From Fimbriosthenelais zetlandica (Eukaryota), in assembly GCA_977030845.1 (NCBI GenBank), contig OZ365112.1:22754001-22818000 (forward strand): a stretch of 64,000 bases of DNA, written 5' to 3'. The notes under the pieces were generated by a model. The model saw nothing but the letters and a program-made list of their open reading frames with translations, had not been told where the DNA came from and ran no database searches. The first letter of the stretch is position 1. Each line of letters begins with the position of its first letter. The position numbers and the translations under genes are program-made. This document shows positions 6,434 to 57,156 of this stretch, in pieces.

Positions 6434-7595
6434 CTATAATCTGATAGAGAGGCTTTCTGTAGGTATATATTCCATCTCAGGTACACCAGCTACATTATCA
6501 TACATGCCAGGCCTTAGCTGGCCCCCCTCTTGTGAGGCCCTTTCTGGGGCCTCGGCTTCCTGATGGGCCTCGTTAAGGGCTTCTGCCCTCACCAGCGGAG
6601 GTACATGGCGTAGTGGTGCCCCTGATCTGAGAGGGGCATCCAGGACTAGACCTTCTGTCAAGGATGGCCTCACCGGGGCATGTTCTGTTTTCTCATCCTC
6701 GTGGACTGACGGTACCTTTGTCATGGCGGTGAGGTTAGAGCGGAGACGTAAACTACCGGTGTTGGCCTTGATGTTGGCCTGGTACATCTTACCGGCAGGT
6801 TTAGCGTTCATGTTCTCACCCAGTGTGTCGTATGCTCGGTTAGTGTAAGCGTAGACACTACTCGCTCCTTCATCAGGGGTCGGGTCATCCTCTGGCTCAG
6901 GCAGCTGACCGTCAGTCTGACCCTCAGCAAAGTTAACGAAGAGCTGTGAGGGATAGAGGTGAAAAGGTGAGACACAGCTGGCTCATCATGATAAATGACA
7001 GCAACTCAGGCTTCCTCCCATTAAAGGGGCAAACAAAATACAATGTACTGCCATTATTAGGTATTACACTTTCTATCGCTATCACTTAAGAGGATTCATG
7101 AAGGTGATATGAGATTTAAGAACAATCTGAGTGTTTGGTAGGGGAGTAGGAGAGGACGAGGATGGAAGAGGAGGTAGTTTTACCTGATCAAGTGTGGTTT
7201 GAGATATTGAGTAATCCTCCACGTGCAGATTCAGTTTCTCCATTTCCAGCACACCAAAAAGCTCAGCCAGGGAGGAGACATGAGCTGGGATCTCAAATTC
7301 CAGCACATGATGATGGCGACTCTGTTTACAAGATTGAAATAAAACAAACCAAATCATTCTCCTGAAAAGTGCACAACTGGAGGAGCCGGGATAATGACAG
7401 CAACAGGCTCATACATGTGTCATAATTCCAATTCCGTATTCATGAGAAATTAAGTACTAGGCCTATATTAATCAAAAACATTCACATACCTTCAGATAAG
7501 AGTCAGGGAAGGTAGAATGCATAAACTCTACCACAGCAGCTTGGTTGATAGAGTGGCCAGCCACTCGTAGTTTGACTGAATACGAGCCACCAAAC
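6434..7595 (-). CDS. ABCA: Regulatory domain 2 and terminal exon (7490-7595, 7184-7321, 6434-6943)
   Basis: [11 protein letters not shown]; [12 protein letters not shown]|LFVNFA followed by a ~160-aa tail ending SLSIRL-stop at 6436-6434. Confidence 0.92.
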
Positions 7596-10500
7596 CTGGA
7601 ATAATGACAAATCACAAATACAGTGTAATCCTACTAATTATAATGATCTTTCGAGATGGACTAAAGTAAGTACCACCTACCAACATTTTTAAGCTGTATG
7701 CTATATATTAACATAGGTAGCATTATAGTAGGTCTATATGAACAGTGACGTGAGTAGTACAATTATGAAAAGTGCCATGAAGAGAGACATACTTGTTTTT
7801 CAGGTGTTGCCCGCTACCTAGACATGTAAAGCGTCCATTGACCATGATGGCTAGACGTGTACAGAGAGCATCACATTCCGCCATGCTATGTGACGTCAGT
7901 ATCACAGACCGCTGGTCTTTAATCACACCGGTAATGTTGTTCCATACCAGGCGACGTGTGGCTGGATCCATGCCTGTTGTTGGCTCATCCTACAATGATT
8001 AAAAGGCAAAAGTTATAAACAATTATAAGTCAGAAAAGAGAAATCCGTTACTGAGTAATAATGATTAAATGTTTGTAGAAACAACGATGTTCAACTGGTA
8101 TAAATCTTAATATGTCCTTACCAAGAGTATCAATTCAGGTTCTCCGAGAAGGGCTAGGGCTGAGGATAGTTTGCGCTTGTTGCCACCACTGTAGGCTTTC
8201 ACCAGTTTATTGGCTCCTGTTGTTAGTCCGAATCTTTGCAGGGCTGAGTCACACACCTGAAAGAAAGAAGATAATATAAAATACTGTTTCATAGTTTAAT
8301 TTCTCAGATAAAACTTTAACAAACTTAAAGGATATGAGGATTACTATTTATTAAGCCAAATAAAGGTATACCTCTTGAATGTCCTCCTCAGGAACGCCTT
8401 TGAGTCTGGCTATACAGTAGATCATTTCAGTCCCAGTCAGCATTGGATCCAGGGCATCCTGCTGTGGGCAGTATCCTACATTCTGTTCCATATTGGACAT
8501 GTCTTCCGAGATACTGAAATACAGAAGATATAAGCCTACTCCTTTCAGACATGCAGAACGATTATACAAATCATTAATTGATAACATACCCAAAGAACTG
8601 TCAAAGAGGTGATTAAAATCATTCCAAAGTATTGCAAAAATTTAATGGAGGGGGGGGGGGATCAAAAGCAGACAGAAAAAGCTCCAGGGTAAGGGATTGG
8701 ACTCACGTTTTGCCGTTGAGAATAGCTGCCCCTCCGGTGGGGAGAAGATTACCGGTGATCATTTTAAACGTTGTTGTTTTCCCGGCTCCATTGACACCCA
8801 GCAGGCCAAAGCACTGAAATATGCATGAAAGGAGGTGATCACTTTACCTTCTCTATTCAATACAATCAAACCTCCATCAGCAAGACACTATGGTGGATAC
8901 AAGAAACACACGTCCCATGGACAGGCTTCATTTATGGCTTATAATAGGAAATATCTTGATATCAGATTCTGCAAAGATCACGCATGATTGTACCAATCTT
9001 ATATTCAATTCATATACACACCTCGCCTTTTGGAACACCAAGGCAAAGGTTTTCCACAGCAAGGACTTTCTTCAACCCACGTCGATAAACCTAACAGAGA
9101 AAGTGAACCTATTGTAATCAAAGTTATCATATATACAGTATGTATGCAAATATCGAGCACGGCACATCTCCATGGTAGTGAGATCTCTCACTGCATGGTA
9201 GTCTAAAGATATATTTAAAGGTGTCTAGTACTGATCGTGGGCTATTCATTAGTTCCTGTACTGGTTATAGCTATATAGGGCCGATAGTATAGATCTAGAC
9301 ATGTAACTGAGTGCATGAAGACATGAATAGTGTTTATGAACCAGTATATTATGGTCCGTGCCCACCTTGGTGAGGTTATGTAGACGGAGGAGGTCGGTTC
9401 TCGCCTCCCCGGTCACCACTCTTTGTCTCTCCAGGCTCACATCACTGTCCTCCTTGTAGTCTGCCTTCTGACGCTTCCTCATTGAACTAGACACATTGAT
9501 CAATACAAACAGTTCAATACATAATACTCAAAATGGTCAATATTGAGTGCTGGAATAAACTATCAGCTCAATATGTAATAGATGAAAATATCGACCAACT
9601 GCTTGGATCACAATCAATGATGAAATTGTCTTTATGGAAGTAAGGTCAGTTCAATATTCTATTGTCAGCTGAATACCAAACTATCAATTCAATACCAACT
9701 GTCCGCTAGTCAGTTCAATAAAAACGGTAATAGGAATATAGCTTTCGTATATTGGAAATAAATATTTACTAACAACAGCTACCACAGATTAAAAATATGA
9801 TGTGGATCAAGGACTGACATAAGCAGATCACTTAATAATCATATTAGTAATGCAAGCCATTCAGACTCACAGGAGCAACTTAAAATATCAATATGCGCGA
9901 AGTATCATATGGATAGTACTCGTACCAACGAGTCTAGGCTTCATTCTAGACTCGTTGCTTGTACCAAGGAAAACATGGACGATTCATATGCATGTTTAAA
10001 GCAAAGAAATCACGAAACAAAATATTAACTAGATCTGATGAACGAAACGACGAAGGTTAAGAAAATCGAGATTATTTCCGTCACATTACAGCAGAGCACA
10101 TCAGAATCCACATTTGTCAAAACATACAAAAATATTATTCGTGCAATGTTACAATCATGGAGTATGGCTTGACACCACAGCATACAGCATGCAAAAAATA
10201 GAAGCAATCCAACCATGTTGTTAGCCTTTTAGCTTCTAACTCACCTGGCTTCAACCTCCATGTACAGTTTTCTTAGGTTAAAAATTTAAAATATCAAGTG
10301 TTAAACGTAAAAATATCTAGTATTTAGTGATAATGTCATCAGTTATTAACTATTACACACGTGGGACTGGGGAAAGTGCAAATGAATGAAACCAAAACCA
10401 AATGTGCTTAAAATGTCATTCTGCAACACATACACTCAGGTTAAATTCTTGTCAGCCTAACCCTGGATGAACATCATGCACTCTATGTGTATTATCCAGT

Positions 10501-13500
10501 TAGAATAAAAATAAAATAATGACAGTGTCAATAAATCATTAACAGCATCAAGTGGACTTGTAATTGTCTATAGATATCTAGGTATATAACCATACCTGTA
10601 TTCACCAAGCGACCTGTAATGTTTGATTTGAAAACGATGTATATACTGATTTGAAAAAACCCTGAATCTTTCACGAAGAAACATCATCTTATATGTATAC
10701 TTAATGCCTGAGACAGGCCTGAGGGCACCATTGTTGCACCAATCCCCATGGGACATGGTAAAATACTGCATCAACGAACTCTGGAGTGTGCTAATTTGTA
10801 TTTATGAATATTTTTGTTACAATTAAAAGTACTTTAAGGTACATAGAAACATTATTTCTGGTATTTTGGCAAGTACCAAACTGAATAGCCACCGACGACT
10901 CGCCTGCAGGAAGACTGTAAAGTTTGTCTATAGATGTTATGTTTGTCTGTAGAACATTGGTACTTGAACAGTACCAAGTACGGTATATAAAGTATGGGGA
11001 CATACCTGCTGGATACACAGCCACGTGCGTCAAAGATGAGGGTGAGTAGGAGAAACACCGTGCCTTCTATTGTCATGGCAACCATATGCCAGCCACACAT
11101 CTCTAGGGAGAAGGGGTTCTTGTAGTTGTCCATGCCAAACCGCTCGAAGACGCTGGTCAGGAACTGGTTGTAGGAGAGTTTGACCAGGCCATCACCCAGG
11201 GCATACTGGGGCAGGATGAGCAGAACCTTCTGCAGAATCTCATGGGCTTGAGCTATAGTCTGAGAATGGAAAACGATCCAATCACATTATCATGTCAAAC
11301 GTACTCATATGAAATAAATCATCAACTTACGAGGTAGTAAAGTCTTATATATATTTCCTGTTATTATAAGATCATTGTAATTGACTTACTTCATTGGCTG
11401 TAAAAAGACTAAGTAGGAATGTACAGGAGGTAGCATTGATTCCTATGAAGAGATTGAGGATGAAGACTGCCATGTAACCGATAGAGATGTCTGAGAAGAG
11501 GCCCACCATAAGGTAGGTTAACGGTATGGTGGCATACCTGGGAAATAATCATCATCTTTATCGACTAATCCACAAATTAAAACATCTATAATTTGGTAGA
11601 AGGCACAGAATAATTATAAATGGATGAATTAATGAATCAGACAAGAAACTGTAGCAATGCTCACCCAAACAGTATAAGAAGTGTAAGGAAGGCTGGTAAA
11701 TTGAGTCTGGCAGTATAGATGGGGATATTAAAGGCCAGAGCTATACAGGCAGTCAAAGCTACTGTCAGTAAGTACGACAGCTGAAAGACAAATACAAAAC
11801 CAATCATTTTACTGGTCTTTCAAAGTAATTACTCACATTAGCTAAGTGATGTTATGCCATAGAGACAGATACAATTAAGACATGTTGAGCAAGTGATTCA
11901 TTGAGGAGAAAATATTTGATGAAATCAGAAGTAGGCTTACCATATCCCATATAAAAGCACTGAACCAATACTGTAAAATTCCCACACCACAGATCATCTG
12001 GAGTTGTTTTTCCTGGTGGATCCTTTCATGGATCAGGTAGATGATATAACCTGCAGGTACAAAGCAGTAGGCACACAGGATAGTCAGAGCTATGCCTGTA
12101 TCTGCAATACCCTGCAGTCTGAAACCAATGAAACAAACCGGCATTATTATTCAATAACTTGCATGACTTGTAAGTCAGAGGGAACTCTCTCAGGGGTAAG
12201 TAAAATCACAGGGGTAAAAGAACAGGGGTAAGTAAAATCACAGAGGGAATTCTATGAGGACAAGGAAGTCAAATCACAGAGGGAATTCCCTGAGAACAGG
12301 GGTAAGGCAAATCACAGAGGGAATTCCCTGAGAACAGGGGTAAGGCAAATCACAGAGGGAATTCCTTGAGGACAGGGGTAAGTTAAATCAGAGGGAATTC
12401 CCTGGGCACAAGGAAGTAAAATTACAGAGAGAATTCTCTGAGGACAGGGAGGTGAAATCACAGAGGGAATTTCCCGAGGTCAGGGGTAAAATTTATTGAG
12501 GGGCATGTATAAGATTACTAAGTCTTACAGAGTGAATTCACTGAGTTGTTCCCGTGAAGCATTGAGTGGATGATTGTAGAGAGAGACACCGTATTCGCTG
12601 GCAGATCTGTTATCATCTGCAGCCTCGATATTGGCTCGCAGTAACATGTTGTTCAGGGTGTTGTAGAAGGCAGGCAGTGCATGATGGCCTTTGTTATTGA
12701 ACCAGACTGTAGCTTTTGGCGATCCTTCCTCCATGTCAAATGTCCATCCTCCATACCTAAAACACACAAATAATAGTATACAGCAACTTATTATATTTAC
12801 AACAAACAACCAAATAACCACAAAATGCTTTTCAACGATGCTTTGCTATAAGTATAGGAGAAATGTCTTTACCGGTTGCTGGTGAGTTTATGGGTAGTGA
12901 GCAGGTACTCTGATGTAGGTAAAGCCTCGCCTGTCAGGTTGTATAACCTGGCTTTGGTGGGTGTTTTCAGGTAGGGTACAGTGTAATCAAATTCTCTCAT
13001 GTTACGTGAACACACCTGGCGCCCATCCCGACATTCACAGGTTGGTAAGTCTGATGGATCATCAGGGTGGATATACTCAGGTTCAGTGGCTCGACATATA
13101 GACCTGAAGAAACGAACAAGCTCAACTATTAGTAAATATAGCGTGATAATATGAAGCTAAGTAATTTCTGGTGTAAAAGGCTGATGTGGGATTTAGAGTG
13201 GTTATACTGACTGGTACTCAGAATCCGTCATACAGGTGGTACCCAGGCCTGGAGCTTCTCGTAGAGTATCTATAGCCAGCTTATTGAATGTATCATTAGC
13301 GTATGGCGCATCATCACTGAAAGTAAAAGACACGCACAATGACAGATAGCAAAAGATATATGGGAACATTCCTGCTTGATATACAGAATAAATGATTAAG
13401 ACTAACCGGAAAAACATGGTTTGTTGTGGGTAGAGTTCAGGAGTCAAGAGTAGCGCTGGCCTGTCCTGAGTTTTGGGTTTGATCAGGGTACAGCCCATTG

Positions 13501-16500
13501 CAAAGAGAATGAAGAGACACGGGAGAATGAGTTGTGAGAGGTAGGTCCTCAAGTCACGCCTGTTGTGGTTGAATCGTTTGGTCAGTAATGCTCGAAGCTG
13601 TCTCGTTTTTAACCGAGCACCTGTGATCTTGGTATGACCCTTCATCGGGCCAGGGGTGCCAACATCTATAGCTACCTCAGCAAAATCTGTAAGAAAATAG
13701 ATTTAGAATTCATAACCTTTCCTGAACCATGTTCGAAAATCTACGACTTACTATAGATTTATTACCTTTGTATACTTTTTGTATACTTACTGCAGATAGG
13801 TATGTCACCTTTGGATGTGGCATGATGCTTAGGCGTACTTTTCCTTAGTTGACTTCCCCTGTCAGAAACGCTGCCTCGTCCACTGTCACTACAACTACCT
13901 GCCTCTCCCCGAACCAGCGTCCATTCACGCATCTTGTCAGCTTCCAGAGGCAAGCCACTTTCTGCCATGGTGGTCAGTTTGAGGAAGATCTAAAGTAGGG
14001 TAAACGTTTGGTGAAAACATATTCAATAGATCACATTTATATAGCAGACTAAATCATGAGAAGTGTAGATCTGAGCAAGTGATGAAGGGATGGCCATGAA
14101 CACTTACTTCCTCTAGGGTGGTGTCAGAAACACCATATTTGTGGATGAGGAGTTCCTCCTTGGCCAGCTCGAGGTTGACAAACATGTCCCGGAAGGCCTG
14201 TACCTGACCATCAGAGGTAGGTAACATAAAGGTCATCTCTGAACCTATCTCCTCTACCAGCCGGGCACCAGGGATGTAACCCTGGATAAACTCTAATACC
14301 TTATGTGCATCACACTCCTCTGTAAAACAAAGGGAGAACTTTAAACTAGTGGCAAGAGTCATGGAATAAGAATACCCCGATCAATATAGTCAAAAGTTAC
14401 GTATTTGGCGTTTAGAAAGCTTTGAGGGTTTGATATTGCCATTAAGATATATTGTGGTAGACTTACCTATGATTGAGTCCCCAGCAGCTTGTTCATTTTG
14501 CGCCTAAAAATAAGCAAGATATGATCATGAAATCAAGAAAAGAATGATGAATATCTAAGAACATGTTGATGAATGTACCAGTAAGTTTTAAAGTTATGCC
14601 TGCGAGTCAAAGAGCAGCTTTACCTTGAGTCGGGGTTGCAGCTTGGCTATGGTGAGATTATAGCCACTACCATACTCTGATTTGAGGAAGAGAGGGGATC
14701 CGGAGCAGACCAGTTCGCCCTACAGACACACAAGGAATGAAGATATTAAAACTGAGAGGAAGTTAACTGGCTCTGGGAATTTGTAATTTTCAGATAGCCG
14801 ATCTTCTTTCTACTCTATAAATTGTTTTATCAAGACTAGTATTCAAGTACTGTAATCTAGAACATACCTGGTGGAGAACAACTATGCGGTCACCAATAAT
14901 TTCAGCCTCATCTAAGTGATGGGTGCTGAGCACAATCGTACGACCTGAAGAAAAACAAATTGTCAAACATACATGTGGCATGAATAGAGTCGGAATATAG
15001 ACATTTTTTAAAACCCACTTCTGTGCTGCATAGTTGTTAGAGTTATTTGTCATTTGTGGGTCTATTCTATAAACCTATTACAGTTGATGCTGTTGGCTGG
15101 CAGTGGCCTTGTCACCTATGATTGACTCACCCTCTCTATGGTCGACGATAAGATCCCAGATGAGTCTGCGGGCTGAGGGATCCACGCCGCTGGTGGGTTC
15201 ATCCAGAATAACCACTTTAGATCCTCCAATAAATGCCAGGGCTACTGATAGACGACGTCTCTGTCCTCCTGATAGCTGAGATACTGTAGTAGAGATCTCC
15301 TTCTGGAGTCCTATCTTATTAATCATACTGAAAAATAGTCAATATTCCTGTCTTAATACACTGAAAAACATGTTGAAAAGAAATTCAGGAAATCAGAGAA
15401 TTACCAGAAATTTTAAAAGGAGAAATGATAACTAACATTTTGACCTCGTCATTAGCTTCCTCTTTGGTGAGTTGACCTTTGGCTTTACAGAAGAATTCCA
15501 TGTGTTCCAGGACGGTCATGTGTTCAAACAAGACGTCATGCTGGGGACAGAATCCTAACGTCGTTTTTAGCTCTGAGTTCTGTGCTAAGATGTCATAACC
15601 CGAGACATAAGCAGTACCGGACGTGGGTGGGAAGATCCCAGTCAACATATGGCTGTCAAACAGAAACATGTATACATGTTATGTAATAACCCATTGTGAC
15701 TGTAGCAATCTGAGCTTGAAATTCTGCAGCTTTTCAAAGTACTACTATGATTGAATAGTACTAGACATGTTAGGTACTTACATGGTGGTTGATTTTCCTG
15801 CTCCATTATGACCGAGGAAGGCCGTTATCTGTCCCTGGTAGAAGTTGACACTGAGATTATTGACAGCAGGTCTCTGTCCTGATCGGTACTTCTTGGTGAG
15901 GTGATGTAAAGACACTCCCACAGGCAGGTCGACTGGGTCAGGCTCACCTGGACCTGCGGCCAGAAATATAGATATTAATAACAACTCATACCTAGAAAGA
16001 ACATGAGTCTAATCCACATGACAATATTTAATACGACCAAGCTGCAACTGGATAAACATTGCAAGGCAAGTCTTAGTTAAATTCATCTTAAATAAAAGAA
16101 ACATTAAGACAACTACACATGATATTTAAGTCTATCAATGTTGATTCTATGAGGTTCTATTTGGGGATCAAGGTGAGGAGTCAACGCATGGAGGAAATGA
16201 GTGATTTTTGATATCAAAATATTGTTTGAAAATAATATATTTTGAATCATAGAAAGACTTTGAAAGGTGACGAGTCTTTGTGGTGGAAAGATATTGTGAA
16301 ATAAATTCATGCTGCACAAAGATGCCTTGGATTTCTAATGGGAAACTCTATCAGAAAACTGGAGCAACGAATATACATTATTAATATTCAATTAATTTAT
16401 TATTGGGATGCACTTATAAGGTACTAAACACTGTAAAAGTGACCATTATTAATAGAACTGGGTCCTAGTTCAGCTGAGAACTCGTGATATGTGCTACATT

Positions 16501-46500: not shown

Positions 46501-49500
46501 ATACAGTGTTTTGTCCTCCATGGTTGCTGTGAGACGAGTGTGCATACCCGACCACAGAGAGGCATCCAGCCAGGAGAGATCCATGGTAGGTACAGTCTGA
46601 GACGTCAGACTCATTACTAGATCCTGCAGCTTCACACCAATCTCAACCATGGCGAGAGGATCGAAACTGTCATTAGTGTCCTTAGTCACCTGAAAGTCAA
46701 TGAAAAGTGGAGCAGATACATTAGAATTGGAAATCCAAAGTCCAATCCGAAAAAGATCAGTTTAAGAATGAATGAAATCAGTTGATTCACAAATGACTTA
46801 CGACTTCATCAATGGCCGCAGTATCAATTACTCCTGCCAGTTCCTCTGCTAGAGTATTGATATCAACAGAGCAGACAGTCATATGGAATGTTTCAAAATC
46901 TTGCTTCTGCTGAGGTCTTATCTCAAACTGTTCCTCAGCTGCCTTCTCACAGAACGCTCTCCAATCACCAGCAAGCAGTGGTGAGGACTGTAGCTGAAAT
47001 TATCACACATATTTGAACTTTCATATCAGGGTTGCCATTTCCCTAGATACTGATGATATATGCAGTTTTCAACTATTTGGGGGCAAAGATTCCCTTTATG
47101 GCTTTACGCTTGTTACAAAATAAATTCCTTACCTTGGCAGGGTCAATGAAGACTGTAGAAAGAATAACCTCCATTGCTGTAGGAAATTTGGGCATGATGC
47201 CCACAAGTTTAGCCACTTCCGGTCTGTTCTTCGTTAAATCGTCCAGTGTCAGATTCTTGGCTGTAAATGAAATGATCAAATATCATGTTGAACCAGGCAG
47301 AAAAATCGTGCATCCTGATTAGAAAGAAAAACTATGAGTCATACTTACCAGTAAACTCTTCTAGGCCACGGTAGACAATATCCATGATCTTTGTGAAATC
47401 ACTGAACGTCTCTGTGGGGACCGGAAGTGACGGAAGCAGCAAAGGACTCATCGTCATTAGAGCTTGGGACAGCACCTCTTCAACACTGCAATCAATGAGT
47501 TACAGATGTAAACAGTTAATATGCTTTCTATATGCTATAATTTCCTATTTCTCTCTCCTATTATATAGAACCTTTTAGAGAGGTCTTTAGCGAAATGTTA
47601 TATGTTTCATCAATACTTACTTGATAGTATGAAGTGTTTGGTTAGCCTGTCCGATGATGTTGGACCATACAGCAGGGTTGGTTAGTTCACCCCAGATGTT
47701 GTCCAGGGTGGGTGGGTTGTCAGACATGACTGTCAGCAGATTAATGTAACCATCCATGTCTCTTATCAAGCTCTCAACATCAGGACGCTGGCTCGGTCCA
47801 TTCAAGGCATCTTCAATCTGTTTTACGAAATGTTTTTGTTACAACTATGCTTCTTGATATCAATGAAAAGAAGGTTTAAATCACCTTGAGAAAAGTTGAA
47901 ATGGAAAATATGGCTAAATACATAGTTAAGGTTCAGTACCTTCTGGGAGAGTTTGGTGATGTTCTCTACAGCAAACATGAAGGAGGTGGTCAGGTTCCGG
48001 GCTTCCTCTGGTGTCAGTGACTTGGCCAGCTCACAGAAGGCTGTGTGAACCTTCTCTAGGTTTACTCCAGAGGTTGCTATCTCAGGGAAGAGTGTTAGCA
48101 AGGCAGACCTATTGTTACAGACCACTCCCGGGTCCTGCAGCCACCTTATCATTTGGTTCACCTGAAAAATGATAGGAGGATATATTGAAATTTAGGTTTA
48201 AATCTTTCGACCTGAACGGCACTGTTAAGTAGATGCAGATATTATAGTTGAAAGTACAGTATCAAACTTACCCTATGTGGGTCCATGATGGAATTAGACA
48301 CTGCCATCATGACCACGTTGGAGATCTGAGGAGAGTCTTGTAGCAGATCAATGAGTCGTTCTAATACCGGTATATGGACAAAGTCTACCAGATTCAGACT
48401 CCGCCCAGTCACTGAAAGATATACGGGGTTAGTAATTGTATGATTGGAGTTGCCATCATTCAGAAGATGTACTTCAAAAATTTAAGTTTGAAACTCATTT
48501 TGTTTTGTCTTACCATTGAGTGCTGGCTCGTTGTTGAGGAGGTTGAGAGTAGCTTGCACAATGTTGATAGCTCTGTTATATTCTACAGGCACATTGTCAC
48601 CTGTTATATTATACAGGGTGTCATGCACCGTAGATAACATCCTGACAATCCTGAAAGAAAAAATCCACCATTGTCACCTTAATCAACAAAAAGGGAAGTC
48701 AAGTTTCAACCAATAAAATCCGAACTGAGACAATAAGTTATAGCAATTAGATAAACTTACTGGAATGTGTTTTTGGTGTAGTTGTCGGTTAGCTGCATGA
48801 ACTGCGCCTGCATGCCGTCTAGATTCATCATACTCATTCCAGGTAACATGGCCTCCTCAGACATCAACTTAGACATGTACTTGGAATTGGTTGTCAGGGT
48901 TCTCAGCAGGTCATTCCAGTCTACTTTTACATATTTACGTAACATAGTTGTACTCATTAGCGTGTCCATCTACAAGGGGAAAACAGCAAGATCAATTCAT
49001 TAACGATGTCAAACAATTTAACATTCGCTCCTGGTCATTTCTTTTTCAAAAGAACGAAACACTTAATTAAAAGTGAGTTTTTACCATTTCTTGATATTTC
49101 TTGGCCTTAGGATCCTCCATAAGTTCCAACTGTACTTCAGTAAAGTTCATTTCACACAGCATCTTCTCCACCTTTGATATTTGACCAGGATTTTTGAAAT
49201 CCATCATGTCTGCCAGACTAAAGTCACCCTGGCACAAACTCTTCTCACTTAGATCAACTGTGGAAAGCATCTTCATAATCTGCAAATAGTTGCGAGGGAT
49301 TTCAATGAAAGAAATACATCTATGTTATGAGGAAATAGATATAACAGGCACAATATTGTTTAATCATAGTTTTTGAGCACATGGATGATTATTTTACCTT
49401 CTCTGGGCGAGCCATGGCCGTCATCACAGCGTCACTGAGATCAGGACTGGCATTAAACACTGCTTTTACCATCTTACTTAACTTGGTGTCGTCCGACATT

Positions 49501-52500
49501 AAGCTGGAAAGGTCCAACTTATTGTTTTCTGAAAACAGACATCACAAACAAATACAGTATATCACTATCAGAGGTAAACCGACCTTCCTGGCAGTCCTAA
49601 CTATAGTCATAAAGTGAGTCTTCATGTGTCAATACCTTCAAGTGAGGCCATCATGTTGTTCATGTCCTTGGCCATGGTAGAGATAGCATTTAGTTTGGCT
49701 TTCATTGAGCTCCACCACGGGTCCCGAGCTTTGGCCCACCTCCGTTCCAACCCATTCAGGACATTGAGGTAAAACTCCTCCATCCTGCCAAGACAATGTT
49801 AGATTACAATAAAGGTAATTAGATAATTCAGTCATGGAACGAAAGAACAAAATCAATGCAAGCATCGTTGGAAGTATTTTCGAGCCTTCACCTTTGATTT
49901 TCCTCTTCATCGATGGAGTTGATGGCATCACTGATGGCATTTTGAGCCCGGGAGAAAGCCTCAGGATTGAAGCTCTCCATAGCTTTAGCCATCTGTATAG
50001 GAGCCCAGTCATCACTGTTAGCACTAGCCATATGCTTCATGTACTCCACACTGGTATCAAACAGACTCTCCCATGTAAACTTGTCGTCATAGTTGGACTG
50101 AAGTGGAAGAAAGATTTCATCAATTATTGGCAAATATTTGGCAAATATCTAGAGTCTATTCTTGATTATACATATCTCCATGTCCAGTTTATATCTTTTT
50201 AGATAGAGAGGTTTAGAATTACCCCATCAAAAAGCTTGTTGATATTCTCCATCCAGACTGATGCCGGTTGGAGGATGTCAGTGGGTCCGATCTTACAGAT
50301 GGCTTTCTGGATGTCGTCAATTGGGACATCTCGAGGTAGGTTCATCACACTTCCAACAGGTACGGGTAGGCAGAAGAGACCTATAGGGTCAGACGGCACG
50401 AACAAGAGCTTCCTCTGTCATAAGATAAAGCCATATTATAATGAGCTATGAACGGAGAACAAGATGCTGGTGAATTAAATCATTCTGCTCTAAGTGATGT
50501 TCTAGTGTCTGTGAACATGGGACTCACCTTTTGCTGATTATTGAGCATGTTAGCAAAGGACTGAGCCAGGTCAGCTCCATACTGAAGCATATACTGTAGA
50601 ACCCTTCCAAAGTCTTCCTTGTCACTCATGTATGCTGCAACAAAATTCAAAATTATGTTTACTTACTATAACTATCGTGCAAAAGATATCCCGGAGGTGT
50701 TGAACGATGATGTGGAGGGTATTATGAGATAAGATTAAAGTACCATCAAGTGTAGCCATTTGGATGTTAGATGAGGTCATGGAGGAGTAGACACTGAGAA
50801 TGACAGGCTGGATGTCCTTCCATAAAGTGCTGTTCTCAAGTATCTTCCCCCAATTCATGACGGAAGAACGAAGCCTTTGAAGGACAACAAAAATGAGTTA
50901 TATAACAAATTCAATGAAGCTAGTTTTTTAAACATGAAAAAGGTAACAAAGTTAAGAATATTTGGTCTTCTGAATATTCAAGACAGACAAATCAAGGAAA
51001 TGACATCAGGTTTTATTTAAATGAACTCACAAGGGCATGGCAAAACTTTGTTCCAATTTGGACATCAAACTTTTCCAGTCACGGTTACCAAAGTTTAAGC
51101 TGAAGAGACCTGCATCACTCATGACAGTGGACCAGTCTACACTGGCCAGCTCTCCCTCGGGTGAGACTGAGTCAGCCATCTGCCAGGCTCCAAACACAAG
51201 TTGGCTTACATTGGCTCGGCTGTCCCACTCTGACGTCATGATGTCAGTTGTACCATCCAGAACTCCAACCACTTCTCTCACCTGCAAAAGAACATTTACC
51301 AGTTTCTTTACTTGTAAACATCCTCCAAGGCGTTTTTTGTTAAAACAGTCATGTCAATCTCAGTAGTGTCAAGCATGTCAGTGGCTTACATACCTTATTT
51401 TCTAGATTTTTCGCACCAGACTCTTCTATGAATTTGTTCAGGAAGGAGATGAGATTTTCGTCACAGAGTGAAGATTTAAGGTCATCAAGAGTTCTCGGGG
51501 AGACCATATCAATGTTCAGCACTCCCTCCAGACCACCACCTCCACAAAGGTTAGCCTCCAAAGCAGCTGGGTCATCCATCACCATCTGTGGAAGAGAATG
51601 GAAGGGAGTAAAATTATCAGGCTTACATAAACGATAAGGACCCAGGGTGAATTGATCATTGCTGAAATACTACGTACCAAAAGGACATCAGGGTCAGTTA
51701 GAAGGTTGATGACACTTTCTGCATTGTTAGCGCCTATCTGATCTAAAGCCTGTACTAAGTGTTGGAAGGCACTGTTGTTGGCCAACTGCTTGGCTAATTT
51801 CTCATCCAGACCTGCAACACATTGCAACAAATCAGAAGACAAATTACTCATGGAAAACTGTAGAGGAACAAAGAGGTACTTGAAATAAAACAGGGTCCTG
51901 ACTTTTAGTAGAGAGTGCGTTTTTTTTAAAGACAGATTCATATTAATTTCCCCATCTTACCGGGTAGATCTTGGACAATGTGCTCAACAATGTCCATGGT
52001 TATGTTGGCAGCTATCAGGATTGTTCTGATGTAGGGCCACATGACTTGTCCGCGAAGTGCCCCTTCTAGAAGGGAACTGGTGGCAAGGACTTGGCTGAAA
52101 CTGAAGAAAAATAGTAACGGTAATTCGTTAACAGCATTTCAAACATATCTGAATTACAGTTCGAGAAATTGGAGTAGAATTTCAAAAACCAGTGAGTGAC
52201 CTTCAGGCTATCATTGGTAGCCTACGGACGATTGTACTCACGTAGGTGTGACTGGATCAGTGGTATTGAGACCCATGATGGTGGAAGCCAGCTGAGCCCC
52301 AGCTTCCCACACCTCCTGAAGGTTACCATTCTGTATACTGTCCAGCACAGGGCTTAACTGAGGAGACAGCGTCTTCACCTGACTGATCATCCGTGAACCT
52401 GAGGACGCCAGCTCTGTCCAGTTGAGGCGGTCTCCAGCCGTGCTACTCATCACAGTTAACTAAATACAAAAATATTTAAACAATTAGGTCATCACAATAG

Positions 52501-55500
52501 ATATTGTAATAAATTACGGTAGGCCTACAATAATCACATAATAGAACTAGTCGAGAGGACCGAAAGTACTTACCCCAACCATGGTATCTGTTAAGTTTTT
52601 CTGTATTGATGACTCATCGCCGGTCTTTTCGCTCTCCTGTAGTCTGTGACATAGCTGTTTGGATGCCTTCTGTAGGATGAGGGCATCTTCAGGACTAGAT
52701 GTCACAAAGATAGAGGATAAAGAGCCATCCTCGCACACAGATCTCAGTGTTTTGTTGTTTCCCATAGCTGCCAGTATGTGGGATATCTGAAAATTAACAT
52801 CGATTTATTACAATTAGTACTGGAAACCATGCCACAGAAGATTACTTTTTAGGAGTTATAATGTAAAAATGAAGCTTACCCTTGTAGTGTTGAGTCTGGA
52901 TTTCATTAAGACCTTGTTAGAATCCTCAGAAAAGTTAAAAATGGCTGTCATCCTGTCAAAGAGTACAGGGTCCTTCTCTGCCAGCTCCCATATAATACCG
53001 GTGGTATCTGAAACCCAAGACAAGAGTGATAATAAAGGACAATATATACCAACACCAGGATTACCTTCCCGGGCTAATCTAGATGTAGATCAAGTGAGTG
53101 AGTATTTACCTGGTAATGTCAGGGACCCGCCTGACGACCAGTCCGTCACCATCTTGATGTAGTTATAACCATCTCTGACTTGTTCCCAAAGTCCTGACCT
53201 CCCAGACAGATTTCTAACCAAGGGATCCATGTTGTCTAAAAGCTTACTAAACCTGTGGAGAAAAGACGGCAGTAATAAGATTATTAAAGATTCTGTTTTG
53301 GGGTGGTTGGGAAATATTGCCAATGACATGAATTAGTGGATACTAACGACAGGACTTGGTTTCCCACGGAGCCATTGAGCTGATTAACGAAGTCGGCTAC
53401 AGAACCGAGCCACTCGGAGGTCTGAGCCAGTTGGAGGGCGGCCTGAGACACGTTCTTCACAGCGTTATGATCACTGACTATCTCTACAAGGTCAGCCAAG
53501 TCATCCAGCCCGTCAGCTGCCGTGTACTCATCTGCCAACTTCATCAACTTAGAACTCTGGAAAGTAAAACATTCAAATACATCCTCTGGAACTCTGAAAA
53601 GGGGGTTTAATTGCATCAAAGCAGAACACAATGCAGATATATCTGAATCAATAATTAAATTCGTGTTACAATTATCCAAATGAGTGAATGTTGTAGTTGA
53701 GATTATTACTTACAATGCGGAGGATTTTGGAGACATCTATCTGATCTCGGAGGACGTCAGTGATGTTAGGTATGAGAGTCTCATCTATGGCACACAGGCT
53801 GGCAGAGATAGACTTGATGTCCACCTTATTGGAGAAGATCAGGTACTTTGCCAACTTTTCAGAATCACAGACGATGTTTTGCAGGTCGATGAATCCGGAA
53901 AGCTCATATATCTATAGGATAAGAAAAGAGATTCATTTTCAAATGTTACTGGATTATATTTGCGAGTTGGATAAGAGACATTATCATTTTCCTTCTTCCC
54001 CCAAGGTTCTACATGGACAATGTATGGAGAGAGTTACCTCGTTGAGGTTGACTTTGGCATCCATGAGTCCGTTTGCTACATCTGGTGACAGAACTTGGGT
54101 GTCATTCGTCAGATAGTTCTCCAGGTACGCCTCATCCCGAAACAAATTCCCAACACGCATATCAACTTCTGTAAACAGATTGAACAAAAACATCAAGTTA
54201 GATCAGGTAGAATAGTACTTATTGACCTACAACAAAATGTCGAATTCGGTAACGTTTCGGTAAATTTCGCATATAATTTCATTTATTGCCTATATGGCTT
54301 AAGAAAATTAATACAGATTTTTTTTCCCGTTTGCAGTAGGCTATAAATGCACAGACTGAAAGCAAACTCATCTATGTGTTAAGGAAAAAGGATCAATAAG
54401 CACCAGAAAATTGCAGCAACAGTCAAATACAAAAGATTTACAAGGGAAGAATTTATCCCTCGCATATAACCCCAGTAAAGGATATCCGTTCTGTTGAAGA
54501 TAAGGAGGATGGTTCTACAGTATAGCACCTGAAATATTTAATTTCTCTCTAGCAGGGAAGGGAAAAATCCAGGGAAAAGATGTTCATTTTTGAAAAGTAT
54601 TTTAAGACAGGCCTAAGGATTGAAGCAACACAAGCGGACCTATTTTACCTACTTTAAAATATCACATTTCTCACCTTGTATACCTGTTTAAATAAAGCTA
54701 AAATGATGTACTTGCAATAGACAATATGGGGAATTAAAAATCACGTTATGTGTGATCGGTAGGGGAAAATAATAACACTTCTCTATAACATAAAATGAAT
54801 GAATTTAGATAAAACTACTAACATTTACGTGCAGGTTTGTGGACATTGCATGTTTGTACAGAGCTCTTTAGACAATAAAAGATAAATAAATAGGTATAAT
54901 GATTGCCAAGATTCATTGTCTACAGGAGACAAAAGACGAATTAAATTCAAAGTGCTTTATCCTACTCACGTATGAGTTCCTTGACTTTGGGTTGGTTGAG
55001 AGTTTTGGAGAGGGATGACAACATGCGAGTTGTCTTAGGTAAATCCATCAGTAGACCTTGAGTCATGTTGGGATCGTTCATCAACGGGCCTAGAGCAGAC
55101 ATCATTTTAGACATCCTAAAAAAATGATCCGGAAAAGTATTAGATATAACATCAAAGATGAAAAAGAATTGGCTCTATAAAAGTTTTTTTTATAAAGTAT
55201 ATGAATTTAGAATTAAAATACATGATTTCAGAATTCTAATCGGGAGGAGCCTTCAAAGCAGGTAAGCATTTGAAACAAGTGGCTGAATATAATGGCTTCT
55301 CCATCTCACCTGGCTGTGGCTTCCTCGTATACCTGGTTCTCTCCTTTACAATCATTGTTCACATTGCAGACAAAACTCTGTATAAATTCAATACCTCCAG
55401 CACTGGGCATATAACGGGGCTGGTAGTGGCCTGTATAAGACAAACAATAGGACATGTATTTCTGAGTTTGACATATTAGAGATTGTTTAGTCTTCTATGG

Positions 55501-57092
55501 TCCGCTGGGTAGGTCATGCAACAAACCAATTCATTGTTTTTTCCTTCAAGATGTCAAGTTTTCATTTCAGCTCTTTCATTTGTCACATAATTTAAGGGAG
55601 TAGACAGTCGTGACAGACATGAAATTGCGCAATATAATCTGTCTAGAAACTGGGTGAATGAATATCAATATCAACATAACAGATGATAAAAAGACTCCCA
55701 GGCTCAAACCAACCGTGACAATTGGAACTTTTATATGGACACATACCAGGCATACCAGACGCTACAAAAACAATATTATTTATATTATTTATAAACAATA
55801 TAATGTATTTGTAATCAGAGGGGCCCTGAGGTCACAAAGTGAGGTGGTTACATAAGAAGTAAATTAGAACTGTAATGGAGCTCTGATTAGTGATAATTAT
55901 GAGGTTTTAGCTTACAGGTTGGCTGTCGCTCAGGTGGTGCCACCATACGGACGAGGGCAATGACGGCGAATATAGCTGTAGGCCAGATTAACTCCAAGGC
56001 GAAAAGAGTCTGAAAAGAAAATCACAAACAGATCCAGCCACATCCATTTTAATGTTTGGGAACTTTCCAGGCCATGGTCCCTTTAACATTAAAATCAGAT
56101 CAGCCCTGAAACTTTAAACATTTCATAATCTTAGGCTCAGAAATTTTCCAGGTGAACATGTATGTAGAATTGAGATTGGAAGGGATAAGTTTGACGTCCT
56201 CAGTACATACCCACATTAAACACAGATTTTATTCCATACATACAAACATATTGTAATGCACCGCCCATATATAATACAGCCAGAGCTTGATCAACAATGT
56301 CTAATATTACCATTAATAGCACGCCCCCCTGTGGCACCCGAGAAATGTCAATAGAACAAGTCCACCTTACATGTACAATGTGAATGACAATTACACGTCC
56401 GTGGTAACCCAAGGTGGTTCACCATTCAAGAAAAAAATGACCACCACCTAAAAACGTATACCTCTATGAATACCAAATAGATGAGAATCTCCTTTTAGTA
56501 ACGAAAGATGATTCCTTAAATTTAGTAGGGTTGTCACCTTTTGTTGGATTTATAAGGGAATTGATACCTTCAGGTGGTAATTGACATCTAAGTAGTTTTC
56601 ATATACTTATGTGAGCGCCAAGTATTAAAAGTCAATTGTTTTTTTGTAAATTTTATGAGGGAGAAAAGTTGCTTGGAAATTAACCAAGAATGTTTGTATC
56701 ATCTAGTATTATGTAGGTATGGCAGACCGACATGTGTATATATTTGGTTCAGGACTCTTGCCAGAAATCTTAATGGGCCGTGAGATATTGTTTGTAGACG
56801 TAAATGTAGACCTAAAGAGACCAAAAAGATCCATCAGATTCCCTTCCAAAAGAAGGAGTGGCCATCTCCCCAGAACAGGTTTACATAAGTTGCAGCCAAT
56901 TATGTTTTCTTTGGGCACAATCAGTAGTATGGCCCATTTCAAGACACATGCTGATAGTATACAACAGCGAAACAAGAATATAGTTGTCCCGTGTTAAAGT
57001 ATTTTCTTCAAATGTTTTATACTTACCGGCTGGCGCTTTTTCCGGAGTACATTCCTCCAGAGAAGAAGCCCTAACTGCCTTAAAGCACCCAT
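6434..57092 (-). CDS. ABCA: Giant multi-exon ABC transporter, subfamily A (ABCA12/ABCA13-like architecture), about 7,760 aa, about 131 coding exons
   Basis: N-terminus [22 protein letters not shown]|[21 protein letters not shown]..|[28 protein letters not shown] matches the ABCA1 N-terminus. Two NBDs with ABCA-type motifs; TTLDQ|LFVNFA near the C-terminus. Manual exon sum 23,295 nt is divisible by 3, with compatible phases at every junction checked and no internal stop seen. Orthology within the ABCA family is not determinable here. Confidence 0.95.
7793..9486 (-). CDS. ABCA: NBD2 exons (9366-9486, 9022-9090, 8707-8813, 8372-8513, 8122-8256, 7793-7989)
   Basis: [16 protein letters not shown] (Walker A), [23 protein letters not shown]|[32 protein letters not shown]. 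Exon sizes 121/107/142/135 match my recollection of ABCA1 exons 42/44/45/46. Confidence 0.96.
10245..10271 (-). other. Candidate 27-nt microexon (KLYMEVEA) between TMD2 and NBD2
   Basis: aacctaag|AAAACTGTACATGGAGGTTGAAGCCAG|gtgagt; phase 2-2 matching the host intron; consensus donor, weaker acceptor. Confidence 0.45.
11006..12118 (-). CDS. ABCA: TMD2 exons (11941-12118, 11665-11780, 11390-11537, 11006-11259)
   Basis: [37 protein letters not shown]; [13 protein letters not shown]; [18 protein letters not shown]. Confidence 0.93.
12174..12500. repeat. Intronic minisatellite, ~38-bp unit (CACAGAGGGAATTCCCTGAGAACAGGGGTAAGGCAAAT), ~8 degenerate copies
   Basis: CACAG starts recur at 12313 and 12351 (38 bp apart); near-identical central copies. 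Confidence 0.9.
12529..14503 (-). CDS. ABCA: Regulatory domain 1, TM7 and ECD2 exons (14467-14503, 14108-14319, 13791-13989, 13407-13686, 13212-13316, 12873-13103, 12529-12756)
   Basis: [22 protein letters not shown]|[77 protein letters not shown]. Confidence 0.93.
14624..15953 (-). CDS. ABCA: NBD1 exons (15782-15953, 15437-15652, 15131-15327, 14868-14944, 14624-14719)
   Basis: Walker [10 protein letters not shown]-loop [10 protein letters not shown], signature LSGGQRRRL, Walker [13 protein letters not shown]-loop LSTHHLDEA. Confidence 0.96.
16724..17633 (-). other. Three candidate symmetric phase-1 cassette exons in the TMD1-NBD1 linker intron: 17595-17618 (or 17633), 17259-17336, 16724-16849
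   Basis: Lengths 24/39, 78 and 126 nt, all in frame without stops, each with a pyrimidine-tract acceptor and a GT donor. Confidence 0.6.
18030..19541 (-). CDS. ABCA: TMD1 exons (19424-19541, 19107-19297, 18694-18832, 18386-18581, 18030-18170)
   Basis: [41 protein letters not shown]; [30 protein letters not shown]. Confidence 0.93.
19664..24937 (-). CDS. ABCA: Conserved ECD1 core exons (24754-24937, 24445-24600, 24214-24356, 23977-24093, 22725-22974, 22294-22468, 19664-19840)
   Basis: [87 protein letters not shown]: recognisable ABCA1/4/12 ECD1 motifs. Confidence 0.93.
20805..22028 (-). other. Two candidate symmetric phase-2 cassette exons in ECD1: 21969-22028 (60 nt) and 20805-20849 (45 nt)
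   Basis: aattttcag|G ATT..CTG AA|gtataa and gctttttcag|G GCT..GAT CG|gtaaaa; both in frame. Confidence 0.5.
23727..23738 (-). other. Candidate 12-nt microexon (ENLT)
   Basis: tttgcttttgatgtcatcgcag|GAAAACCTTACG|gtaaag inside a phase-0 intron. Confidence 0.5.
29455..29710 (+). mobile_element. ~255-bp interspersed element, copy 1 (contains a ~100-bp MITE-like part with imperfect inverted ends ATGTAACGCC...GGTGTTACAT)
   Basis: Reverse-complement match to 32023-32286 over almost its whole length with few differences. Confidence 0.8.
30815..30871 (-). other. Candidate 57-nt cassette exon ([18 protein letters not shown])
   Basis: tattctttggtgccctcag|A AAA..TGC AG|gtatgg; phase 2-2 matching the host intron 30252-31002. 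Confidence 0.4.
32023..32286 (-). mobile_element. ~260-bp interspersed element, copy 2, inverted relative to copy 1
   Basis: Reverse complement reads ATCATGTATGTAACGCCTGCGTGGGTGGGTGGGTAAAAGGCAAGCAGGGGTTCTTAAAATGGCC...GTGCATTTTATGCTGTTAAG, as at 29455-29710. Confidence 0.8.
37283..37600. repeat. Intronic purine-rich minisatellite, 54-bp unit, ~6 copies
   Basis: GGGGC[CG] anchors at 37291, 37345, 37399, 37453; it explains the repetitive ORFs 37275-37523 and 37313-37534. Confidence 0.9.
38598..38700 (-). other. Non-canonical GC-AG intron
   Basis: Exon 38701-38962 ends GAT AAG followed by GCAAGT; this joins in phase 0 to the next exon (TTG AAC, starts 38597). Confidence 0.75.
55310..56009 (-). 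CDS. ABCA: Coding exons 2-3 (55916-56009, 94 nt; 55310-55430, 121 nt): TM1 and start of ECD1
   Basis: [32 protein letters not shown] / [27 protein letters not shown]; canonical splice sites, phases 0-1-2. Confidence 0.93.
57027..57092 (-). CDS. ABCA: First coding exon (66 nt): [22 protein letters not shown]
   Basis: ATG at 57092-57090 in context agcATGg; donor GTAAGT at 57026-57021. 22 codons, the same length as the first coding segment of ABCA1 (from memory). An upstream acceptor (tttttacag at 57210) implies a non-coding upstream exon. Confidence 0.92.
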
Positions 57093-57156
57093 GCTGGTGA
57101 AGGGTTTGGGTTTCTATCAATATTTCCCAGGTGTGAAGAAGTAGAAAAGCTTAATG

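What the first reader, a model, noticed from the sequence alone, without database searches (positions are those of the whole stretch)
6434..57092. A ~7,760-aa ABCA transporter whose first extracellular domain is a 25-fold tandem array
Seen: a continuous, phase-compatible exon chain runs from a canonical ABCA N-terminus at 57092 to the terminal exon at 6434. Between TM1 and the conserved ECD1 core lie about 5,600 aa made of 25 copies of a ~200-235 aa helical module, with a Cys pair in 24 of 25 copies and many N-x-S/T sequons. Known: ABCA1/ABCA4 carry this segment once (ABCA1 LKLQDFLVDNETF..LTSLCNGSKSEEM..SELCGLPREKL), and the largest human ABC protein, ABCA13, is 5,058 aa. Inference: this is a lineage-specific giant ABCA with a modular, repeat-extended ectodomain, an architecture I do not recall being described. 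Copies are too diverged to be an assembly duplication. Both ATPase sites keep Walker A, signature, Walker B DE and H-loop, so it looks like an active pump.
Basis: partly seen in the sequence, partly recalled or inferred. Interest (0 to 1): 0.95.

Follow-up and report, generated by a model that had tools for sequence, protein, structure and literature searches.

The report
Giant ABCA transporter with 25 lid repeats
This is one very large lipid-pump gene (about 7,800 amino acids) whose outer domain is 25 old, diverged copies of the "lid" piece that ABCA4 carries once; many invertebrates have the same design, which I found described in no paper.

Summary
On the minus strand, a GT-AG exon chain (one GC-AG intron) runs from the ATG at 57092 to the stop at 6434. 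My model has 132 exons and 7,844 aa. No RNA runs were listed, so this gene has no transcript evidence.

After TM1 come 25 tandem modules of about 210 aa (aa 88-5683). A profile built only from other species' proteins finds all 25, and none in shuffled sequence. The two conserved Cys are present in 24 of 25 modules. N-x-S/T sequons occur at twice the shuffled expectation. Modules share at most 27% identity and no DNA similarity, so this is not an assembly duplication. Most modules are four-exon cassettes in phases 0-2-1-0.

The module profile matches human ABCA4 residues 100-234 (E 1.7e-6), the flexible ECD1 lid. The core is a complete ABCA with canonical motifs in both NBDs.

"Lineage-specific" is wrong. 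The same design, with 8 to 29 modules, occurs in brachiopod, molluscs, nemerteans, priapulid, horseshoe crab, echinoderms and a hemichordate. Lineus reaches 7,432 aa. Assembled transcripts of other species carry it as one ORF. In my tree these genes follow the species tree, and vertebrate ABCA12 plus ABCA13 form a single clade. Pfam has no family for the module, and I found no paper describing it.

The scan's own notes report a smaller ABCA cassette array elsewhere in this genome. I did not check it.

The parts
6434..57092 (-). Whole coding span of the gene: 132 exons, 7,844 aa in my curated model
57027..57092 (-). Exon 1: start codon and ABCA N-terminus [22 protein letters not shown]
   Evidence: same motif at the N-terminus of relatives
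55916..56009 (-). Exon 2 with TM1 ([19 protein letters not shown]); it is the only hydrophobic segment before aa 6100
55310..55430 (-). Exon 3: conserved ABCA motif [22 protein letters not shown] at the start of ECD1
   Evidence: compare P0004
53720..55329 (-). Module 1 (aa 88-250); best match is module 1 of Lingula
52646..53484 (-). Module 2 (aa 277-412)
51397..52432 (-). Module 3 (aa 446-663); exons of 218/140/134/192 nt
50268..51131 (-). Module 4 (aa 715-876)
49115..50085 (-). Module 5 (aa 896-1108)
47994..48924 (-). Module 6 (aa 1134-1336)
46811..47781 (-). Module 7 (aa 1367-1569)
45718..46662 (-). Module 8 (aa 1582-1789); exons of 194/143/128/189 nt
44590..45559 (-). Module 9 (aa 1800-2003); exons of 191/140/128/183 nt
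43454..44427 (-). Module 10 (aa 2016-2219); exons of 194/143/128/183 nt in phases 0-2-1-0
42380..43308 (-). Module 11 (aa 2232-2437)
41290..42178 (-). Module 12 (aa 2452-2654); third and fourth exons fused (317 nt)
40357..41068 (-). Module 13 (aa 2705-2905); second to fourth exons fused (457 nt)
39411..40247 (-). Module 14 (aa 2913-3153); second to fourth exons fused (559 nt)
38472..39236 (-). Module 15 (aa 3167-3349); exon 38962-38701 ends at the gene's only GC donor; short Cys-pair exon at 38597-38460
37037..38321 (-). Module 16 (aa 3365-3576); the one module without the Cys pair
36155..36876 (-). Module 17 (aa 3585-3787); most of it lies in the 910-nt exon 36596-35687
35413..36121 (-). Module 18 (aa 3799-4007); first three exon equivalents lie in the same 910-nt exon
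34133..35167 (-). Module 19 (aa 4019-4225)
32934..33982 (-). Module 20 (aa 4235-4435)
31384..32790 (-). Module 21 (aa 4451-4661)
29332..31166 (-). Module 22 (aa 4679-4858); second Cys sits in a longer loop
28023..29021 (-). Module 23 (aa 4932-5134); weakest full module, with four Cys
26235..27100 (-). Module 24 (aa 5297-5463). Exons at 27906-27364 just upstream may be a decayed extra module
25126..25600 (-). Module 25 (aa 5593-5683 matched; full cassette 26039-25066). Best match is the last module of Lingula
22294..24937 (-). Conserved ECD1 core after the array ([10 protein letters not shown]... starts at 24351). Colinear with Lingula P0023 residues 4431-4559. Holds the RKRR site at 22407-22418
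18030..19840 (-). TMD1 (TM2-TM6)
14624..15953 (-). NBD1: [33 protein letters not shown]
13809..14338 (-). First regulatory domain (Pfam R1_ABCA1, PF23321)
11006..13686 (-). TM7, ECD2 and the rest of TMD2. The exon at 12756-12529 is conserved in all relatives
7793..9486 (-). NBD2: [33 protein letters not shown]
6434..7595 (-). Second regulatory domain (PF23321 hit at 7085-7408) and C-terminal tail starting LFVNFAEGQ; stop at 6434

Best explanation
This is one protein-coding gene for a full-size ABC subfamily A lipid transporter of about 7,800 aa. It is the lophotrochozoan counterpart of vertebrate ABCA12/ABCA13.

Layout. TM1 acts as a signal anchor. After it, the first extracellular (or lumenal) domain contains 25 tandem all-helical modules of about 210 aa. 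Each module is homologous to the flexible 'lid' segment that ABCA4 has once (residues about 100-234). Nearly every module is stapled by one conserved Cys pair, and the array carries many N-glycosylation sequons. The normal ECD1 core follows, then TMD1, NBD1, R1, TMD2 with ECD2, NBD2 and R2.

Origin (inferred). The array grew by unequal duplication of a four-exon cassette whose outer phases are both 0, so whole modules can be gained or lost in frame. Later intron loss fused exons in modules 12-15 and 17-18.

Shown here: the anatomy, the homology to the lid, the intact ATPase motifs, and the wide distribution of the design.

Inferred function. ATP-driven lipid movement by the core, as in other ABCAs. 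The amplified lid would serve as a long glycosylated lumenal or extracellular scaffold that holds or hands on lipid, or that directs the pump to its vesicle compartment, as reported for the N-terminal region of mouse ABCA13.
For: - Continuity: a continuous phase-compatible chain with short introns. The median is 126 nt, and only 88-153 nt separate the last module from the ECD1 core.
- Module order: open reading segments on the minus strand hit the four quarters of the module profile in strict order, cycle after cycle.
- Module count: 25 modules found by a profile that contains no window sequence, and none in shuffles.
- Conserved Cys: two Cys are invariant across modules of six other proteins and are kept in 24 of 25 modules here.
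- Sequons: 110 observed against 53 expected. There is no hydrophobic segment between TM1 and aa 6131.
- Lid homology: the module profile hits ABCA4 100-234 at E 1.7e-6. This lies in or next to the lid, residues about 138-271, which is unresolved by cryo-EM (bioRxiv 10.64898/2026.06.25.734683).
- Fold: the AF2 model of the 348-aa exon is all-helical with pLDDT 76.7. Among 550,129 AFDB Swiss-Prot entries, human ABCA4 [114-322] ranks second with probability 0.91, although E is only 0.15.
- Core: colinear with Lingula P0023 residues 4431-6085. Two ABC_tran and two R1_ABCA1 matches. All ATPase motifs present.
- Same design as single proteins elsewhere. P0079 is an uninterrupted 13.8-kb ORF on 14.6-15.0-kb contigs from two runs.
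- Tree: window + P0054 + P0069 (100), next to Lingula. Vertebrate ABCA12 + ABCA13 form one clade (100).
- Mouse ABCA13 needs its long N-terminal region for vesicle localisation and cholesterol internalisation (PMC7948424).
Against: - There is no transcript or protein evidence for this gene; no runs were listed.
- The gene model is my own. Several short exons (78, 57 and 95 nt), the stretch 27906-27364 and the TMD1-NBD1 linker exons are uncertain.
- The tree has no other ABCA subfamilies as outgroup, so placement with ABCA12/13 rests on the species-tree-like topology and on the literature.
- Single-exon bit scores to solved ABCA4 or ABCA1 are as high as to mammalian ABCA13.
- Vertebrate ABCA12 and ABCA13 show almost no detectable modules.
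- The structural match to the ABCA4 lid is not statistically significant.
- The function of the array is inference only.
Confidence: 0.82

Rival explanations
1. Two transcription units. A TM-anchored repeat glycoprotein would be encoded at 57-25 kb, and a separate ordinary-size ABCA at 25-6 kb. Alternatively the main product could be a short isoform from an internal start, as was argued for human ABCA13.
For: No RNA data exist for this gene. Shorter ABCA13 forms lacking the N-terminal region have been reported in human (PMC7948424).
Against: - The core at 25-6 kb has no N-terminus or TM1 of its own. The only ABCA N-terminus and TM1 lie at 57-55.9 kb.
- Introns at the array/core boundary are 88-153 nt, which leaves no room for a terminator plus a promoter.
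- Relatives are single proteins with the same order of parts.
- Assembled transcripts in other species carry TM1, modules and core in one ORF.
Confidence: 0.1
2. Part of the array is decayed. Some modules would be pseudo-exons that are skipped, so the real protein would have clearly fewer than 25 modules.
For: - Modules 2, 22, 23 and 25 match the profile only in part.
- The stretch 27906-27364 is poorly modelled.
- Module 16 has lost both Cys.
- Whole modules begin and end in phase 0, so skipping one keeps the reading frame.
Against: - Every module keeps open frames, canonical splice sites and the expected phases.
- Sequon enrichment runs across the array.
- The first and last modules find their positional counterparts in Lingula.
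Confidence: 0.06
3. Assembly artefact: a few modules were copied many times by mis-assembly.
For: None found.
Against: - Modules are at most 27% identical at the protein level.
- No module-to-module DNA match appears in a sensitive self-comparison. The only repeats are one inverted 289-nt pair and a 54-nt tandem array, both in introns.
Confidence: 0.01

Closest known systems
Vertebrate ABCA13 (human 5,058 aa) and ABCA12
   Same: - Full ABCA core.
- Canonical ABCA N-terminus and TM1, followed by an ECD1 of thousands of residues.
- In my tree ABCA12 + ABCA13 form one clade among these giant genes.
- The literature places the arthropod counterparts as sister to human ABCA12 + ABCA13 (PMC3724490).
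- One module next to the ECD1 core is weakly recognisable in mammalian ABCA13 (about residues 3056-3169, hhalign probability 58-74%, both Cys aligned) and in a shark ABCA13-like protein.
   Different: - In vertebrates the long region shows no detectable periodic module array by HMMER or hhalign.
- It is described as lacking conserved domains.
- Here 25 modules are clearly recognisable, and the protein is about 2,800 aa longer than human ABCA13.
Unannotated giant ABCA proteins of invertebrates, for example Lingula anatina XP_013420949 (6,258 aa), Lineus longissimus (7,432 aa), Liolophura sinensis (7,098 aa), Octopus vulgaris (7,118 aa), Acanthaster planci (6,136 aa) and Ptychodera flava XP_070556625 (6,292 aa, partial)
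   Same: Same order of parts: TM1, then 8 to 29 modules with the same two Cys, then the ABCA core. The core is 40-50% identical to the nearest of them. The first and last modules correspond by position with those of Lingula.
   Different: - The window protein has the highest module count and length among the full-length models I saw.
- Its central modules 7-12 are closest to each other, which suggests local expansion.
- Ptychodera has nearly identical recent copies and an inserted C-type lectin domain. This gene has neither.
ABCA4 and ABCA1 (solved structures), ECD1 lid
   Same: The module profile matches ABCA4 residues 100-234 with both Cys aligned. That segment lies in or next to the apical lid of ECD1. 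The rest of the protein aligns with ABCA4, ABCA1 and ABCA7.
   Different: ABCA4 and ABCA1 have the segment once and an ECD1 of about 600 aa. Here it occurs 25 times and ECD1 is about 6,090 aa. ABCA1 was not hit by the sequence profile even at E 10.

Membership tests
ABC subfamily A full transporter | Two nucleotide-binding domains with Walker A, Q-loop, signature, Walker B and H-loop | tested here: met
   Motifs listed. Pfam ABC_tran matches on the NBD exons.
ABC subfamily A full transporter | Topology: TM1, a large ECD1, five more TMs, NBD1, TM7, ECD2, five more TMs, NBD2 | tested here: met
   Hydropathy shows TM1 at aa 24-42 and then no hydrophobic segment until aa 6131. TMD1, TM7 and ECD2 exons align to ABCA4, ABCA1 and ABCA7 and to Lingula.
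ABC subfamily A full transporter | A regulatory domain after each NBD (Pfam PF23321 R1_ABCA1) | tested here: met
   Hits at 14057-14380 (E 6.4e-6; 26.6 bits, just under the 27-bit cut-off on this single exon) and at 7085-7408 (E 2.8e-11).
ABCA12/ABCA13 group | Groups with ABCA12/13 to the exclusion of other ABCA subfamilies | tested here: inconclusive
   The tree of 30 giant ABCAs follows the species tree, with ABCA12 + ABCA13 as one clade, but it has no ABCA1-10 outgroups. Single-exon bit scores do not separate ABCA13 from ABCA4 or ABCA1. Support from the literature: PMC3724490.
ABCA12/ABCA13 group | ECD1 extended to thousands of residues | tested here: met
   ECD1 is about 6,090 aa.
Invertebrate lid-array giant ABCAs (no published name) | Tandem array of modules of about 210 aa between TM1 and the ECD1 core, recognised by a profile built from other species | tested here: met
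   25 modules, i-E from 1e-4 to 2e-26, and none in shuffles.
Invertebrate lid-array giant ABCAs (no published name) | Two conserved Cys per module | tested here: met
   Invariant in 34 modules from six other proteins. Present in 24 of 25 modules here. Whether they form a disulfide was not tested.
Invertebrate lid-array giant ABCAs (no published name) | Array and core on one mRNA | not testable with these tools
   No runs were listed for this genome. It holds for a relative: P0079 is one ORF on transcript-size contigs from two runs.

The most novel reading that the evidence does not exclude
The amplified lid modules stack into a long continuous lipid-holding conduit or rod. It would carry or present lipid far from the membrane, for example into a secreted matrix, mucus or cuticle. 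On this reading the unexplained 3,500-aa N-terminal region of vertebrate ABCA13 is a degenerate remnant of the same array.
Probability: 0.15. Interest if true: 0.8.

Novelty: new variant of a known kind. Interest (0 to 1): 0.5.

Why it matters
A 2020 paper (PMC7948424) states that the long N-terminal region of ABCA13 has no conserved domains, although the protein needs it to work. Invertebrate counterparts such as this gene show what that kind of region is made of. It is a tandem array of the ECD1 lid, the part of ABCA4 that cryo-EM could not resolve.

That gives three practical things:
- a module definition (a profile, two Cys and a four-exon cassette) that could become a domain family;
- a testable idea for what the lid does;
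- a clear case of a transporter ectodomain growing by exon-cassette duplication.

The gene itself is an ordinary, if extreme, member of a widespread family.

Tried and rejected
- RNA evidence: two run searches, on the big exon and on an 8-kb stretch, listed nothing. Read laying could therefore not be used.
- Foldseek of the AF2 model against the PDB gave nothing (best E 0.4). That is expected, because the ABCA4 lid is not resolved in the solved structures.
- The ESM Atlas search gave no usable lead.
- Pfam has no family for the modules in this gene or its relatives.
- My first gene models used micro-exons of 9-15 nt as frame fixers and missed the Cys-pair exon of module 15. Reading the sequence showed a GC donor after 38701. 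Allowing GC donors and adding homology bonuses removed the micro-exons.
- Placing the gene by comparing single-exon bit scores against solved ABCAs and ABCA13 was uninformative.
- hhalign found no modules in fish or frog ABCA12 and only one or two weak ones in ABCA13. So I do not claim that the vertebrate N-terminal regions are arrays.
- The assembly-duplication reading was rejected on divergence.
P0079 was used instead.


Full report
WHAT IS THERE. The window is animal DNA of about 40% G+C, with no gaps. On the minus strand, open reading segments between 57 kb and 6 kb translate to ABCA-like sequence.

Three gene models of my own all link the ATG at 57092 to the stop at 6434. They score codon usage and splice sites; the later ones add bonuses for homology. 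It also missed one exon, because module 15 ends an exon at a GC donor (ATAAG|GCAAGT after 38701), which I found by reading the sequence.

The curated model has 132 exons and 7,844 aa. All introns are GT-AG except that one. The median intron is 126 nt and the longest is 2,453 nt. A few short exons and the stretch 27906-27364 remain doubtful, so the length is good to roughly 100 aa either way.

THE REPEATS.
- A self-comparison of the translated segments showed matches of about 30% identity at a spacing of about 1.1 kb. In the protein the offsets are multiples of about 216-220 aa.
- An iterated profile found the four quarters of the module in strict order, cycle after cycle, on separate open segments. 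This is independent of how I chained the exons.
- A profile built only from modules of other species (alignment A1: hemichordate, brachiopod, starfish, sea urchin, oyster, annelid) finds 25 modules in the window protein at i-E < 1e-3, and none in five shuffles.
- The array spans aa 88-5683, which is genomic 55329-25126.
- Two Cys are invariant in A1. In the window both columns are Cys in 23 modules. Module 22 has its second Cys in a longer loop, and module 16 has neither.
- The array has 110 N-x-S/T sequons against 52.7 +/- 6.7 after shuffling. The 390-aa cytosolic stretch from NBD1 to just before TM7 has 2.
- There is no hydrophobic segment between TM1 (aa 24-42) and aa 6131. The whole array therefore lies on the non-cytosolic side, as ECD1 does in other ABCAs.
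- Modules are old. Pairwise identity has a median of 14.5% and a maximum of 27%, and there is no DNA similarity between modules. Assembly duplication is excluded.

EXON CASSETTE. A typical module is four exons of about 190-220, 131-149, 128 and 183-204 nt, in phases 0, 2, 1 and 0. This agrees with the earlier scan note s1-219938. Each module therefore starts and ends in phase 0, which allows whole modules to be duplicated or skipped in frame. Introns have been lost in modules 12, 13, 14 and 15. A 910-nt exon covers parts of modules 17 and 18.

WHAT THE MODULE IS.
- Pfam has no family for it, in this gene or in relatives.
- The A1 profile searched against all PDB sequences hits only ABCA4 significantly, at residues 100-234 with E 1.7e-6 and both Cys aligned.
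- A 2026 preprint states that the lid and tunnel of ABCA4 come from ECD1. It also states that the apical lid, about residues 138-271, is the longest region unresolved by cryo-EM because it is flexible.
- The 348-aa exon (most of module 17 plus most of module 18) folds as an all-helical model with pLDDT 76.7.
- That model finds nothing in the PDB, as expected for an unresolved region.
- Among 550,129 AFDB Swiss-Prot models, human ABCA4 [114-322] ranks second (probability 0.91, E 0.15). Bovine ABCA4 and mouse ABCA1 [100-310] are also in the top 30. This is a weak hint, but it points the same way.
For ABCA1 I have only the weak structural hint.

THE CORE. After module 25, introns of 88-153 nt lead into the conserved ECD1 core ([10 protein letters not shown]... 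at 24351). From there the gene is colinear with Lingula P0023 residues 4431-6085. Both NBDs have all motifs: GHNGAGKST / LSGGQRRRL / VVILDEPT / STHH, and GVNGAGKTT / YSGGNKRKL / LILLDEPT / TSHS. Both ABCA regulatory domains are present. It looks like an active pump, although nothing here measures activity.

RELATIVES.
- A search of 1.84 billion representative proteins with the 348-aa exon gave only 21 hits. One was a 6,292-aa Ptychodera flava protein with 16 matched stretches.
- Searches seeded from that protein and from Lingula found many giant ABCAs annotated 'uncharacterized protein'.
- Module counts with my profile: Ptychodera 29 (partial model), Lineus 23 (7,432 aa), Liolophura 21 (7,098 aa), Aplysia 20, Lingula 19, Octopus 18-19, Acanthaster 19, Lytechinus 17, Saccostrea 17, Priapulus 15, Tachypleus 11.
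- Several hits are Logan assemblies in which the ORF nearly fills the contig. P0054 is 6,229 aa on a 19,037-nt contig.
- P0079 is an uninterrupted ORF at 391-14178 on contigs of 14,985 and 14,572 nt from two runs. These can hardly be anything but transcripts. They carry N-terminus, modules and core together.
- In a tree of the last 2,150 aa of 30 such proteins, the window groups with P0054 and P0069 (support 100) and then with Lingula (87). Molluscs, ecdysozoans and echinoderms form their own groups, and vertebrate ABCA12 + ABCA13 form one clade (100). This is the pattern expected for one ancient gene that duplicated in vertebrates. A published tree puts arthropod genes as sister to human ABCA12 + ABCA13. 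My tree lacks other ABCA subfamilies, so I treat this placement as likely, not proven.
- The window organism is therefore probably a lophotrochozoan not close to any named species in the list. Its best core identity is 44-50%.

VERTEBRATES. HMMER finds no modules in mammalian ABCA13 or in the bony-fish, frog, lizard and bird ABCA12 proteins I checked, apart from one partial hit in pike abca12. hhalign finds one module next to the ECD1 core in mammalian ABCA13 (residues 3056-3169, probability 58-74%). It finds a similar one in a shark ABCA13-like protein, and three or four weak ones in a butterfly protein. Whether the long vertebrate regions are degenerate arrays stays open.

HISTORY OF THE ARRAY (tentative). 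Window modules 1, 2 and 25 are most like Lingula modules 1, 2 and 19. Modules 14-21 tend to match Lingula modules 5-14 in order. Modules 7-12 are most like each other. This suggests an old array with later local expansion in the middle. Identities are only 20-32%, so a proper tree is needed.

FUNCTION. The core should move lipid with ATP, as other ABCAs do; this is established knowledge of the family and was not tested here. For the array I infer a long glycosylated, disulfide-stapled helical scaffold on the lumenal or outer face. It either holds or passes on lipid, or it targets the pump. The lid of ABCA1 is reported to show cholesterol-like densities. Mouse ABCA13 without its N-terminal region mislocalises and fails to internalise cholesterol. 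I cannot tell between these two roles.

NOVELTY. The gene is a member of a widespread family that sits in databases without annotation. I found no paper or Pfam entry that describes the module or the array. A 2020 paper states that the ABCA13 N-terminal region has no conserved domains. I therefore rate it a new variant of a known kind and of moderate interest. The design is real and explanatory, but it is neither lineage-specific nor unique to this genome.

The scan's own notes also mention a second ABCA about 4.9 Mb away in this genome with about four cassettes (s1-207660). I could not check it. Lingula likewise has a 4,287-aa paralogue with 7 modules.

Noticed in passing
window 22404-22421 (minus strand): The sequence [12 protein letters not shown], a furin-type RKRR site, sits in the exon at 22468-22294 in the conserved ECD1 core. 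The earlier scan note s1-219965 reported it. I did not test whether relatives keep it.
   Followed up: partly
window 38699-38700: The only non-GT donor in the gene is a GC-AG intron (ATAAG|GCAAGT) after exon 38962-38701. Gene finders that allow only GT donors drop the Cys-pair exon of module 15.
   Followed up: yes
window 29434-29710 and 32023-32310: An inverted pair of 289-nt copies, 92% identical, lies in two introns of the array. It is probably a small transposable element.
   Followed up: no
window 37283-37583 and 12222-12489: Two intronic tandem repeats. One has a 54-nt unit in about 5 copies, the other a unit of about 36-38 nt in about 7 copies. The first gives long spurious open frames on the minus strand.
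   Followed up: no
P0004 residues 619-721 (Ptychodera flava XP_070556625): A C-type lectin domain is inserted inside the module array of the hemichordate relative. That protein also has runs of nearly identical modules, so its expansion is recent.
   Followed up: partly
Proteins P0160, P0094, P0154, P0158 (frog and fish ABCA12): Predicted ABCA12 of a frog (6,662 aa) and of several fishes (about 6,000 aa) are far longer than human ABCA12. My module profile gives none or only one partial match in them. What fills their ECD1 is unexplained.
   Followed up: partly
Lingula also has a 4,287-aa paralogue with 7 modules. So more than one array-bearing ABCA per genome may be usual.
   Followed up: no
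window 1-6400 and 57100-64000: The flanks hold only short open frames with no Pfam match (2233-2793 +, 4695-5012 -, 58206-58520 -, 59082-59393 -). I recognised no neighbouring gene.
   Followed up: partly
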